From Octopus bimaculoides (Eukaryota), in assembly GCF_001194135.2 (NCBI RefSeq), contig NC_068993.1, positions 60,393,756-60,457,755 on the forward strand: a stretch of 64,000 nt of DNA. The letters run 5' to 3'. The position numbers and the translations under genes were made by a program. The notes beneath the pieces are model-generated. The model was not told the origin of the DNA. It did not search any database and worked only from the letters and a program-made list of their open reading frames with translations. Within the stretch, counting starts at the first letter, position 1, and each line of letters begins with the position of its first letter. Below are positions 21,991 to 22,173 of this stretch, piece after piece.

Positions 21991-22173
21991 CTACTACTAT
22001 AGAATGGGAATGGCCAGCATCACCTAACTCAACTTCCACGCTCGTCCGGTATTCTCCTTCCAAAGTGCCATGTTTATGACCGGATAATATTAGTTGAGAA
22101 CCTAATTGGTTATACCATACTCCTTGTAATGTTGCACAGTTTTCTATTTGCTTGCCATACGCTGAGCATCTGC
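21991..22173 (-). CDS. Internal coding exon of an avidin/streptavidin-family (biotin-binding beta-barrel) gene, N-terminal half of the domain
   Basis: The minus strand has a polypyrimidine acceptor (ctctgtttcccttgatttcag|GC at 22173) and a consensus donor (GTAG|gtaagt at 21991). The exon is 183 nt, phase 1-1 and stop-free. It translates as (G)RCSAYGKQIENCATLQGVWYNQLGSQLILSGHKHGTLEGEYRTSVEVELGDAGHSHSIVV(G). WYNQLGS equals streptavidin W21-S27, and GEYRTSV aligns with GTYESAV (streptavidin) and GTYITAV (avidin). Confidence 0.9.

What the first reader, a model, noticed from the sequence alone, without database searches (positions are those of the whole stretch)
21991..22173. Spliced avidin/streptavidin-family exon with intact biotin-contact residues in a probable cephalopod genome
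Seen in the sequence: a clean 183-nt exon with canonical AG/GT sites encodes LQGVWYNQLGSQLILSGHKHGTLEGEYRTSV. Established knowledge: streptavidin contacts biotin through N23, S27, Y43 and S45 in this half of the barrel (avidin N12, S16, Y33, T35). All four positions are retained here as N, S, Y and T, and WYNQLGS is identical to streptavidin rather than chicken avidin (WTNDLGS). The intron boundaries argue for a host gene, not bacterial contamination. Inference: this is a secreted biotin-sequestering protein, possibly for antimicrobial defence of eggs, skin or mucus. I know of no biochemically characterised cephalopod avidin.
Basis: partly seen in the sequence, partly recalled or inferred. Interest (0 to 1): 0.8.

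Follow-up and report, generated by a model that had tools for sequence, protein, structure and literature searches.

The report
Octopus tandem avidin gene, exon 2
The flagged stretch is a real exon of an already catalogued but unstudied Octopus bimaculoides gene for a biotin-binding (avidin-family) protein that has two avidin domains in one chain and is probably tethered to the cell surface.

Summary
Window 21991-22173 (minus strand) is a 183-nt phase 1-1 exon with an AG acceptor and a GTAAGT donor. On its own it matches Pfam Avidin (E 3.5e-9).

- **Gene:** with a start-codon and signal-peptide exon at 53114-53192, it is 100% identical to residues 1-88 of O. bimaculoides LOC106884292 (XP_014791082.1; UniProt A0A0L8I521, auto-named 'Avidin'). 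The other exons lie outside the window. The O. sinensis orthologue spans 135 kb.
- **Exon limits:** comparison with the Argonauta hians orthologue confirms them, and synonymous changes predominate.
- **Protein:** signal peptide, two tandem avidin barrels, and in orthologues a C-terminal GPI-signal-like hydrophobic tail.
- **Biotin pocket:** every contact residue checked is conserved or conservatively replaced in both domains.
- **Age:** the two-domain layout is shared with cnidarians and an annelid, and domain-2 sequences form their own clade. The gene is therefore an old animal gene, not a bacterial import.
- **Nearest relatives:** over the whole domain it is closer to chicken avidin than to streptavidin.
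- **Fold:** the predicted structure resembles engineered single-chain dimeric streptavidin.

Biotin binding, the membrane anchor and the biological role are inferred, not shown. I rate it a new member of a known kind, of moderate interest.

The parts
21991..22173 (-). Coding exon 2 (183 nt, phase 1-1). It encodes the end of the signal peptide with its likely cleavage region (..FG RCSA|YG..), the first Cys, and strands beta1-beta4 of avidin domain 1, including contact residues N, L, S, Y, T, V.
   Evidence: Sequence. Pfam Avidin E 3.5e-9. 100% identical to P0064/P0063 residues 28-88. Same exon in A. hians L001 33148-33330.
22174..22175 (-). Acceptor AG of exon 2, preceded by the pyrimidine-rich run tctctgtttcccttgatttc.
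   Evidence: Cross-species alignment becomes alignable exactly here.
21985..21990 (-). Donor GTAAGT of exon 2.
   Evidence: Identical GTAAGTA in A. hians, with similarity lost after it. Orthologue proteins continue ..VVG|TAPKS, not the read-through GKYSTS.
53114..53192 (-). Coding part of the first coding exon. ATG is at 53192-53190. It encodes MLAWFSNDITTCWLLNTPLWVLFLLF plus the first base of the Gly codon (the hydrophobic signal peptide). An in-frame TGA lies at 53201-53199, just upstream.
   Evidence: tblastn. Sequence. Translation and upstream stop. Joining G + GC gives Gly and restores ..LLFGRCSAYG.., exactly as in P0064.
53112..53113 (-). Donor GT of the first coding exon (G|GTGAGT).
22176..53111 (-). 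Interior of intron 1. The full intron, 22174-53113 including both splice dinucleotides, is 30,940 nt. It is rich in microsatellites, interspersed repeats and assembly gaps.
   Evidence: Positions of the two exons. The A. hians intron 1 is about 30 kb. Repeats and N runs.
1..21984 (-). Start of intron 2 (at least 21,990 nt counting the donor). No further exon of the gene is detectable in it, so exon 3 (TAPKSPGAAFGFSVVW...) lies beyond the window edge or, less likely, in the 707-N gap at 16191-16897.
   Evidence: tblastn with the 100%-identical O. bimaculoides protein finds only exons 1 and 2. The O. sinensis gene spans 135 kb. N runs.

Best explanation
The flagged stretch is coding exon 2 of the Octopus bimaculoides gene LOC106884292 (UniProt A0A0L8I521). 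The gene lies on the minus strand, and its first coding exon is 31 kb upstream in the same window.

**Shown**
- The gene encodes an N-terminal hydrophobic segment consistent with a signal peptide, followed by two tandem avidin-family domains.
- Exon 2 supplies the end of the signal peptide and the first four strands of domain 1. These carry the Asn, Ser, Tyr and Thr residues that in avidin and streptavidin hydrogen-bond the ureido ring of biotin.
- The Trp, Ser, Thr and Asp/Asn residues that complete the pocket are encoded by exons outside the window and are intact in both domains.

**Inferred**
- Each domain binds biotin tightly, as avidin does.
- The two barrels of one chain pack as an intramolecular pseudo-dimer, a natural counterpart of engineered single-chain dimeric streptavidin. 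They may pair further into a pseudo-tetramer.
- The mature protein is held on the outer cell surface by a GPI anchor. I infer this from the C-terminal signal in orthologues, because the O. bimaculoides gene models have aberrant 3' ends.
- It captures or withholds biotin at a surface, either to deprive microbes of it or to take it up.

The two-domain layout is ancient. It is shared with cnidarians and an annelid, so the gene is vertically inherited and is not a bacterial import.
For: **Exon and gene**
- Exon limits and frame.
- Pfam Avidin on the exon alone: E 3.5e-9.
- Exons 1 and 2 are 100% identical to P0064/P0063 of O. bimaculoides. O. sinensis and O. vulgaris differ at one residue, EVEIG against EVELG.
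- Same exon and splice sites in A. hians, with third-position and synonymous changes predominating and introns unalignable.
- Cuttlefish-like orthologue P0065 is encoded without interruption on roughly 2-kb contigs assembled from 16 sequencing runs. That is consistent with spliced mRNA carrying the same exon 2/3 junction.

**Protein**
- Pfam finds two full Avidin domains, 213 bits.
- Pocket residues N12, L14, S16, Y33, T35, W70, S75, T77, F/W79, W97, L99, W110 and N/D118 are conserved in both domains across cephalopods and in most cnidarian and annelid homologues examined. Most exceptions are in domain 1 of a few non-cephalopod proteins.
- The AlphaFold2 model has pLDDT 75 and pTM 0.71, with eight strands per domain.
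- Foldseek single-domain matches to xenavidin, avidin and zebavidin have TM 0.86-0.90. The two-domain match to single-chain dimeric streptavidin 6S50/6S4Q has TM 0.80.
- Only two hydrophobic segments exist: the N-terminus and the extreme C-terminus.
- The layout 'small residues then a hydrophobic tail ending the protein' is present in most full-length homologues.

**Age**
- Domain-2 sequences of cephalopods, cnidarians and the annelid form a clade that excludes all domain-1 sequences in 100 of 100 NJ bootstraps.
Against: - No binding, localisation or expression data exist for this protein.
- The exons that carry most of the pocket, the second domain and the C-terminus are not in the window. 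Everything beyond residue 88 rests on database gene models and orthologues.
- The two O. bimaculoides models (P0063, P0064) end differently from all orthologues and lack the hydrophobic tail. The anchor is therefore inferred by orthology for this species.
- No GPI or signal-peptide predictor was available. Both calls rest on hydropathy and sequence layout.
- Domain 2 of O. bimaculoides has Phe in place of the contact Tyr33.
- The relative orientation of the two barrels comes from a model of moderate confidence.
- Sea-urchin fibropellins show that an avidin fold does not guarantee biotin binding (PMC8033661).
Confidence: 0.8

Rival explanations
1. It is a freely secreted, soluble avidin. It would be released into egg coats, mucus or haemolymph to starve microbes of biotin, like chicken egg-white avidin.
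For: There is an N-terminal signal-peptide-like segment and an intact pocket. Known eukaryotic avidins are described as secreted proteins (PMC8033661). The O. bimaculoides models P0063 and P0064 lack a hydrophobic C-terminus. A few homologues (P0003, P0008, P0086) end without one. GPI proteins can also be shed.
Against: Orthologues in O. sinensis, O. vulgaris, A. hians and two decapodiform cephalopods end in a hydrophobic tail preceded by small residues, as do most cnidarian homologues. The annelid homologue has a true transmembrane helix plus a cytoplasmic tail. The divergent O. bimaculoides 3' ends look like annotation errors, because they depart from the orthologues exactly at a conserved exon boundary.
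Confidence: 0.15
2. It is an avidin-like fold that no longer binds biotin and serves a structural, adhesive or pattern-recognition role, as the avidin-like domain of sea-urchin fibropellins does.
For: Fibropellins keep the fold but do not bind biotin (PMC8033661). A multi-domain, membrane-linked architecture is unusual for a vitamin scavenger. According to the title of Guo et al. 2017 (cited in PMC8033661; I did not read the paper itself), amphioxus avidins have an immune role as well as binding biotin.
Against: Fibropellin's loss of binding is attributed to replacement of W70 and W110 by charged residues. Here W70, W97 and W110 and all hydrogen-bonding residues are kept in both domains of every cephalopod orthologue and of most cnidarian and annelid homologues examined. 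Such conservation is hard to explain without selection on the pocket. No EGF or other domain is detected.
Confidence: 0.08
3. It is a dead exon, a pseudogene fragment, bacterial contamination or a recent horizontal transfer.
For: WYNQLGS is identical to streptavidin, and the exon alone scores best against streptavidin entries in the PDB. The locus is riddled with transposon remnants.
Against: The frame is open and the splice sites are consensus. The exon pairs with a start-codon exon to reproduce an annotated protein exactly. Synonymous substitutions predominate against A. hians. Introns of 31 kb and more than 22 kb flank it. Orthologues lie on chromosome-scale contigs of four cephalopods and in transcript-like contigs. 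The whole domain is closer to vertebrate avidins. The tandem duplication predates the cnidarian-bilaterian split. Neither exon overlaps a repeat.
Confidence: 0.02

Closest known systems
Vertebrate avidins (chicken avidin, BBP-A, AVR4, xenavidin, zebavidin)
   Same: Same Pfam family. They are the best full-domain sequence matches among solved structures: avidin 73.6 bits (E 1.4e-19), xenavidin 72.4, BBP-A 70.3, zebavidin 67.6. Foldseek TM is 0.86-0.90. The contact residues are the same, the short loop after W70 is avidin-like, and Cys residues align at or next to avidin C4 and C83, the disulfide pair. There is a signal peptide.
   Different: Vertebrate avidins are single-domain, soluble, secreted homotetramers. 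The octopus protein has two domains in one chain, an extra conserved Cys pair, a conserved FTRxEQxxGPRKxxxTHxP extension after each domain, and (in orthologues) a C-terminal GPI-like signal. Identity is only about 36%.
Streptavidin (Streptomyces avidinii)
   Same: The WYNQLGS motif is identical. It has D128 at the position that is Asp in octopus domain 1 (avidin N118) and Trp at the position of avidin F79. Identity is about 37%.
   Different: It is bacterial, intronless and single-domain. It lacks the Cys pair and has a longer loop (KNNYRNAH) after W79. Its whole-domain score is lower than avidin's, about 55 bits.
Amphioxus avidins (Bjavidin2, UniRef A0A1W5XGF1; Guo et al. 2017, Dev Comp Immunol 70:106, cited in PMC8033661)
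   Same: It is an invertebrate avidin retrieved as a homologue: E 1.6e-28, 45% identity over the domain. The pocket residues are the same. By its title it is the one invertebrate avidin with reported biotin binding and an immune role.
   Different: It has a single avidin domain preceded by an unrelated N-terminal region of about 97 residues, and no hydrophobic C-terminal tail. I could not read the paper itself.
Engineered single-chain dimeric streptavidin (PDB 6S50/6S4Q) and dual-chain avidin (PDB 2C4I)
   Same: Two avidin-type barrels sit in one polypeptide. These are the top Foldseek matches of the whole model: TM 0.80 normalised to the target over about 303 columns. They are also the top PDB sequence hits.
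   Different: They are laboratory constructs made from identical or circularly permuted domains. The octopus protein is a natural, anciently duplicated pair whose domains are only 41% identical to each other and are joined by a disordered linker of about 40-90 residues.
Sea-urchin fibropellins
   Same: They are invertebrate extracellular proteins that carry an avidin-like domain.
   Different: Fibropellins combine EGF repeats with one C-terminal avidin-like domain. That domain has lost W70 and W110 and does not bind biotin (PMC8033661). The octopus protein has no EGF domains and keeps both Trp residues.

Membership tests
Avidin/streptavidin family (Pfam PF01382) | Significant match to the family profile above the curated threshold | tested here: met
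   The exon alone scores 37.5 bits, E 3.5e-9, against a cut-off of 24. The full O. bimaculoides protein scores 213 bits with two complete domains, profile positions 2-116 of 116.
Avidin/streptavidin family (Pfam PF01382) | Eight-stranded antiparallel beta-barrel fold | tested here: met
   This is a prediction only. The AlphaFold2 model of orthologue P0062 shows eight strands in each domain with domain pLDDT mostly 85-95. Foldseek TM is 0.86-0.90 to xenavidin, avidin and zebavidin.
Avidin/streptavidin family (Pfam PF01382) | Biotin-contact residues (avidin N12, S16, Y33, T35, W70, S75, T77, F79, W97, W110, N118) | tested here: met
   All are conserved or conservatively replaced (F79W, N118D as in streptavidin) in domain 1. 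Domain 2 is the same except Y33F in O. bimaculoides only. Four of these residues are encoded in the window exon.
Avidin/streptavidin family (Pfam PF01382) | High-affinity binding of D-biotin | not testable with these tools
   This needs recombinant protein and a binding assay.
Avidin/streptavidin family (Pfam PF01382) | Oligomeric assembly in which W110 of a neighbouring barrel closes the pocket | tested here: inconclusive
   W110 is present in both domains. The model's two barrels superpose on single-chain dimeric streptavidin at TM 0.80. However, pTM is 0.71, no multimer prediction or interface inspection was possible, and the linker has low confidence.
Secreted eukaryotic avidins (soluble egg/serum type) | N-terminal signal peptide | tested here: met
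   The hydrophobic segment LLNTPLWVLFLLFG is followed by RCSA|YG. This rests on hydropathy and layout only, because no dedicated predictor was available. The start codon is fixed by an in-frame upstream stop in both octopus and the cuttlefish mRNA.
Secreted eukaryotic avidins (soluble egg/serum type) | Single avidin domain with no membrane-anchoring sequence | tested here: not met
   There are two domains. Orthologues end in a hydrophobic tail typical of a GPI-attachment signal.
Fibropellin-type avidin-like proteins | EGF repeats followed by one avidin-like domain lacking the key Trp residues | tested here: not met
   Pfam finds no family other than Avidin. W70 and W110 are retained.
Bacterial avidins (streptavidin and relatives): contamination or recent transfer | Intronless bacterial gene context, closest relatives bacterial | tested here: not met
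   Spliceosomal introns of 31 kb and more than 22 kb flank the exon. Orthologues lie on cephalopod chromosomes. The whole domain scores higher against vertebrate avidins. The domain duplication is shared with cnidarians.

The most novel reading that the evidence does not exclude
Animals from cnidarians to cephalopods carry an ancient, so far undescribed class of avidins. These are natural 'single-chain dimers' of two diverged avidin barrels, displayed on the cell surface through a GPI anchor (a transmembrane helix in the annelid homologue). Each barrel is followed by a conserved GPRK...TH.P extension. Such a protein would act as a surface biotin trap or receptor rather than a soluble egg-white-type scavenger. 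It could serve vitamin capture from seawater or symbionts, or local starvation or recognition of microbes at epithelia. It would also be a ready-made natural scaffold of the kind protein engineers built artificially.
Probability: 0.5. Interest if true: 0.55.

Novelty: new member of a known kind. Interest (0 to 1): 0.4.

Why it matters
Avidins are among the most heavily used proteins in biotechnology, yet their natural roles are poorly understood. The characterised eukaryotic ones are all single-domain, soluble proteins from vertebrates, amphioxus, sea urchin and fungi (PMC8033661).

This exon belongs to a gene showing that cephalopods, together with cnidarians and an annelid, keep a two-domain, probably membrane-anchored avidin with a fully preserved biotin pocket. 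If binding and anchoring are confirmed, three things follow:
- avidin function would extend from 'egg antimicrobial' to a cell-surface vitamin-binding system that predates bilaterians;
- there would be a natural model for the single-chain dimeric and dual-chain avidins that were engineered with some effort;
- there would be a defined candidate for studying how marine invertebrates manage biotin with respect to microbes.

The sequence itself is not a discovery. It is already in NCBI and UniProt with an automatic Avidin domain label.

Tried and rejected
1. The word-indexed homologue search with the 61-residue exon peptide returned nothing. The exhaustive HMMER search was needed instead.
2. tblastn of chicken avidin and streptavidin against the window found no second-half exon. 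Nor did tblastn with the 100%-identical O. bimaculoides protein. The rest of the gene is outside the window, or less likely in the 707-N gap.
3. I considered a read-through alternative. The ORF continues past the donor as GKYSTSQ..., which resembles streptavidin GRYDSAP and adds 1.4 bits to the Pfam score. I rejected it because all orthologue proteins continue G|TAPKS/TAPRS, and DNA similarity to A. hians stops at GTAAGTA.
4. The look-up of XP_014791082.1 in the contig index failed: not on record. The O. sinensis locus was too long to fetch. I used A. hians for the exon map instead.
5. I considered horizontal transfer or contamination and rejected it.
6. Rfam and tRNA scans of the window found nothing.
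7. A Pfam scan of other long ORFs found only transposon debris and sub-threshold hits.
8. Literature searches for cephalopod, mollusc or cnidarian avidins and for natural tandem avidins found no relevant paper.

Full report
**1. The observation**

Read on the minus strand, the window shows ...tctctgtttcccttgatttcAG|GCAGATGCTCAGCG...ATAGTAGTAG|GTAAGTacagc.
- The acceptor AG is at 22175-22174.
- The exon is 22173-21991 (183 nt).
- The donor GT is at 21990-21989, within a consensus GTAAGT.
- Translated from the third base, the exon gives RCSAYGKQIENCATLQGVWYNQLGSQLILSGHKHGTLEGEYRTSVEVELGDAGHSHSIVV. Two bases at the start and one at the end belong to split Gly codons, so the exon is phase 1-1.

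The peptide alone matches Pfam PF01382 (Avidin) at E 3.5e-9, 37.5 bits against a cut-off of 24, over profile positions 2-47 of 116. It also matches streptavidin, tamavidin, zebavidin and avidin chains in the PDB. This is far beyond chance for 61 residues.

**2. The gene it belongs to**

The word-indexed protein search found nothing with so short a query. An exhaustive HMMER search found 60 relatives. The best was a 416-residue protein with two matching stretches (P0001). A follow-up search named it and its relatives:
- P0001 is from Argonauta hians.
- P0061 is O. sinensis LOC115218420.
- P0062 is from O. vulgaris.
- P0063 is UniProt A0A0L8I521 'Avidin' of O. bimaculoides.
- P0064 is XP_014791082.1, LOC106884292 of O. 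bimaculoides.

tblastn of these proteins on the window finds two exons only: the flagged one, and a start-codon exon at 53192-53114 (minus strand). The second encodes MLAWFSNDITTCWLLNTPLWVLFLLF plus one base. It has donor G|GTGAGT, and an in-frame TGA lies three codons upstream of the ATG. Joining the two exons restores ...LLFG-RCSAYG..., so residues 1-88 are 100% identical to both O. bimaculoides entries. O. sinensis and O. vulgaris differ at one residue, EVEIG against EVELG. The window is therefore Octopus bimaculoides, and the finding is exon 2 of LOC106884292.

Intron 1 is 30,940 nt. Intron 2 runs off the window and is at least 21,990 nt. No further exon is detectable, although an 87-nt exon could in principle hide in the 707-N gap at 16191-16897. 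Long introns are expected here: the O. sinensis orthologue spans 135 kb, and the A. hians gene spans 54 kb with a 30-kb first intron.

**3. Independent support for the exon limits and for selection**
- In A. hians the same 183-nt exon sits at L001 33148-33330, with ...TTTGCAG| before it and |GTAAGTAG after it.
- The two exons are 88.5% identical, while the flanks are unalignable.
- Of 21 nucleotide differences, 14 fall at third codon positions.
- 13 of the differing codons are synonymous and 6 are not.
- The ORF can be read through the donor as GKYSTSQ..., which resembles streptavidin GRYDSAP. All orthologues continue G|TAPKS/TAPRS instead, so the GTAAGT donor is the real one.
- A close relative of the Acanthosepion pharaonis protein (P0065) is encoded without interruption on contigs of about 2 kb assembled from 16 sequencing runs. 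This is what spliced mRNA would give, and it carries the same junction..SIVIG|SAPYS.
- Several short database fragments from other species stop or read 'GK'/'GQ' right after the equivalent Gly. That is the signature of a gene caller reading into a G|GTAAG intron at the same place.
- Neither exon overlaps any of the interspersed repeats in the window.

**4. The protein**

Pfam finds two complete Avidin domains and nothing else in the octopus, Argonauta, Owenia and Nematostella proteins. I aligned both O. bimaculoides domains with chicken avidin and streptavidin. The pocket residues compare as follows.

| Avidin residue | Domain 1 | Domain 2 |
|---|---|---|
| N12 | N | N |
| L14 | L | L |
| S16 | S | S |
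| Y33 | Y | F (Y in the other cephalopods) |
| T35 | T | T |
| V37 | V | V |
| W70 | W | W |
| S75 | S | S |
| T77 | T | T |
| F79 | W | F |
| W97 | W | W |
| L99 | L | L |
| W110 | W | W |
| N118 | D | N |

- Avidin C83 is kept in both domains. The Cys matching avidin C4 aligns in domain 2 and lies one residue earlier in domain 1.
- The same pattern holds in both domains of every cephalopod orthologue and of most cnidarian and annelid homologues examined. Most exceptions are in domain 1 of a few non-cephalopod proteins.
- Only two hydrophobic segments exist: the N-terminal signal-peptide-like one and the last 13 or so residues.
- After each domain there is a conserved extension, FTRxEQxxGPRKxxxTHxPxRxGE(D).
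- After the second extension comes a short spacer, then small residues (S/A/C/G), then a hydrophobic tail that ends the protein. This is the layout of a GPI-attachment signal.
- The Owenia homologue has a transmembrane helix and a cytoplasmic tail instead.
- The two O. bimaculoides models diverge from all orthologues just before this region (..EQAAG|LMKY.. and ..EQAAD|KPKK..). They probably have mis-called 3' exons.

**5. Structure**

I ran AlphaFold2 on the O. vulgaris orthologue P0062 with a 42-sequence alignment.
- Mean pLDDT is 75 and pTM is 0.71.
- Each domain has eight strands, with pLDDT mostly 85-95.
- The inter-domain linker and the pre-tail spacer have low confidence.
- Helices are predicted at the two hydrophobic ends.

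Foldseek against the PDB puts engineered single-chain dimeric streptavidin (6S50, 6S4Q) first. E is about 1e-17 and TM is 0.80 normalised to the target, over about 303 columns covering both barrels. Single-domain matches follow to zebavidin, xenavidin, avidin and AVR4 (TM 0.86-0.90). The model therefore places the two barrels against each other much as in a streptavidin dimer. This is a prediction of moderate confidence, and I could not inspect the interface.

**6. Relationship to known avidins**
- The exon alone scores best against streptavidin.
- The whole domain 1 scores 73.6 bits against chicken avidin, 72.4 against xenavidin, 70.3 against BBP-A and 67.6 against zebavidin. It scores about 55 bits against streptavidin and tamavidin 2.
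- Percent identity is about the same to both: 36% to avidin and 37% to streptavidin.
- WYN[QE]LGS is simply the consensus of the animal homologues.
- In a neighbour-joining tree of individual domains, domain 2 of cephalopods, hexacorals, octocorals and the annelid forms a clade that excludes every domain 1 in 100 of 100 bootstraps. Cephalopod domain 1 groups with hexacoral domain 1.
- The duplication therefore predates the cnidarian-bilaterian split. The gene is an old, vertically inherited animal gene, not a bacterial acquisition.
- Single-domain relatives occur in amphioxus (including the published Bjavidin2), a hemichordate and priapulids.

**7. Literature**

In the held library I found no paper on a cephalopod, mollusc or cnidarian avidin, and none on a natural tandem avidin. 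A 2021 survey (PMC8033661) makes these points:
- It states that known eukaryotic avidins are secreted.
- It notes that many uncatalogued eukaryotic avidin genes exist.
- It recalls that fibropellins do not bind biotin, and that substituting W70 and W110 of chicken avidin with the residues found in fibropellin virtually abolishes binding.

Both Trp residues are kept here.

**8. How it most likely works**

*Shown:* the exon, the gene structure within the window, the species, family membership, the two-domain architecture, conservation of the pocket, and the antiquity of the duplication.

*Inferred:*
- Each barrel binds biotin in the avidin manner. The exon-2 residues N, S, Y and T bind the ureido group, and the Trp cage comes from downstream exons.
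- The two barrels form an intramolecular pseudo-dimer.
- The protein enters the secretory pathway and is GPI-anchored on the outer leaflet.
- It traps biotin at a surface.

Whether this serves antimicrobial deprivation (as proposed for egg avidin), vitamin capture, or microbe recognition (as the title of the amphioxus paper suggests) cannot be decided here.

*Rival readings* are given in the Rival explanations section with probabilities: a soluble secreted avidin, a non-binding avidin-like domain, and a pseudogene or contaminant.

**9. Verdict**

It needs three corrections:
- The gene is already catalogued, with an automatic Avidin label.
- The similarity to streptavidin is local only.
- The product is a tandem, probably surface-anchored avidin rather than a simple secreted one.

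I rate it a new, uncharacterised member of a known family, of moderate interest (0.4). The more novel family-level reading, an ancient class of GPI-anchored natural single-chain dimeric avidins, has about an even chance of being right.

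Noticed in passing
window 21592-21894 (minus strand): A mariner-type transposase remnant lies in intron 2, starting about 100 nt downstream of the exon-2 donor. The ORF at 21787-21894 hits Pfam Transposase_1 (PF01359) at E 3.3e-9. The adjacent ORF at 21592-21762 reads ...DNTWPHT...LDIAPSDYHLF..., which looks mariner-like but has no Pfam hit.
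   Followed up: partly
window 22195-22275: (CA)n and (TA)n microsatellites end about 25 nt upstream of the exon-2 acceptor. The A. hians intron has no counterpart at that spot.
   Followed up: no
window, 18 N runs (e.g. 16191-16897, 41865-42592, 59129-60046): The window is a gapped scaffold. It has 18 runs of N of 10-918 bases, about 4.3 kb in all. A short exon could be hidden in the 707-N gap inside intron 2.
   Followed up: partly
window, e.g. 17664-17848, 28354-28525, 36331-36579, 40765-40995, 45398-45592, 49264-49494, 55559-55807, 57310-57478, 60059-60455: At least 24 segments of 100-400 nt are repeated three or more times within the window on either strand (SINE-like interspersed repeats). 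Their spurious translations recur, for example ...LQLDALPNANH... Rfam and tRNA scans find nothing in them.
   Followed up: partly
window 53223-53224 (minus strand): A good acceptor-like site (tgtcttttAG|CATCC) lies 30 nt upstream of the ATG. The start-codon exon may therefore be preceded by a separate 5'-UTR exon. This is untested without RNA-seq.
   Followed up: no
outside the window: P0063 and P0064 (O. bimaculoides gene models), C-terminal 35-110 residues: The two public O. bimaculoides models end differently from each other and from all orthologues, exactly after ..TFTRYEQAA. They lack the conserved GPRK...hydrophobic tail. P0064 ends in a Cys-rich stretch that looks foreign. These are probably mis-annotated 3' exons.
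   Followed up: partly
outside the window: domain 2 of P0063/P0064 (GEFRT): O. bimaculoides alone has Phe in place of the biotin-contact Tyr (avidin Y33) in domain 2. O. sinensis, O. vulgaris, A. hians and the decapodiform cephalopods keep Tyr.
   Followed up: partly
family alignment A1; P0062 residues about 152-172 and 318-340: A conserved extension, FTRxEQxxGPRKxxxTHxPxRxGE(D), follows each avidin domain in cephalopods, cnidarians and the annelid, and also follows the single domain in a hemichordate. It has no counterpart in avidin or streptavidin, is modelled with low confidence, and its role is unknown.
   Followed up: partly
L001 (A. hians) about 52993-53130; P0061 residues about 197-248: An extra linker exon is present in the A. 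hians protein and in O. sinensis isoform X1. It is absent from the O. vulgaris and O. bimaculoides models, which suggests alternative splicing of the inter-domain linker.
   Followed up: no
window 11561-11881 (+) and 40473-40778 (-): There are weak, sub-threshold Pfam hits: a reverse-transcriptase fragment with a YVDD-like motif (RVT_1, E 0.006) and a C2H2-type zinc finger (zf-met, E 9e-4). They are probably retroelement debris inside the introns.
   Followed up: no
L002-L007 (Logan contigs from runs SRR29271455-SRR29271486): Transcript-like contigs of about 2 kb encode the full 387-residue decapodiform orthologue with a 5' leader of about 400-450 nt. The three codons before the ATG (TGA CTG ATC) translate identically (*LI) in the octopus window.
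   Followed up: partly
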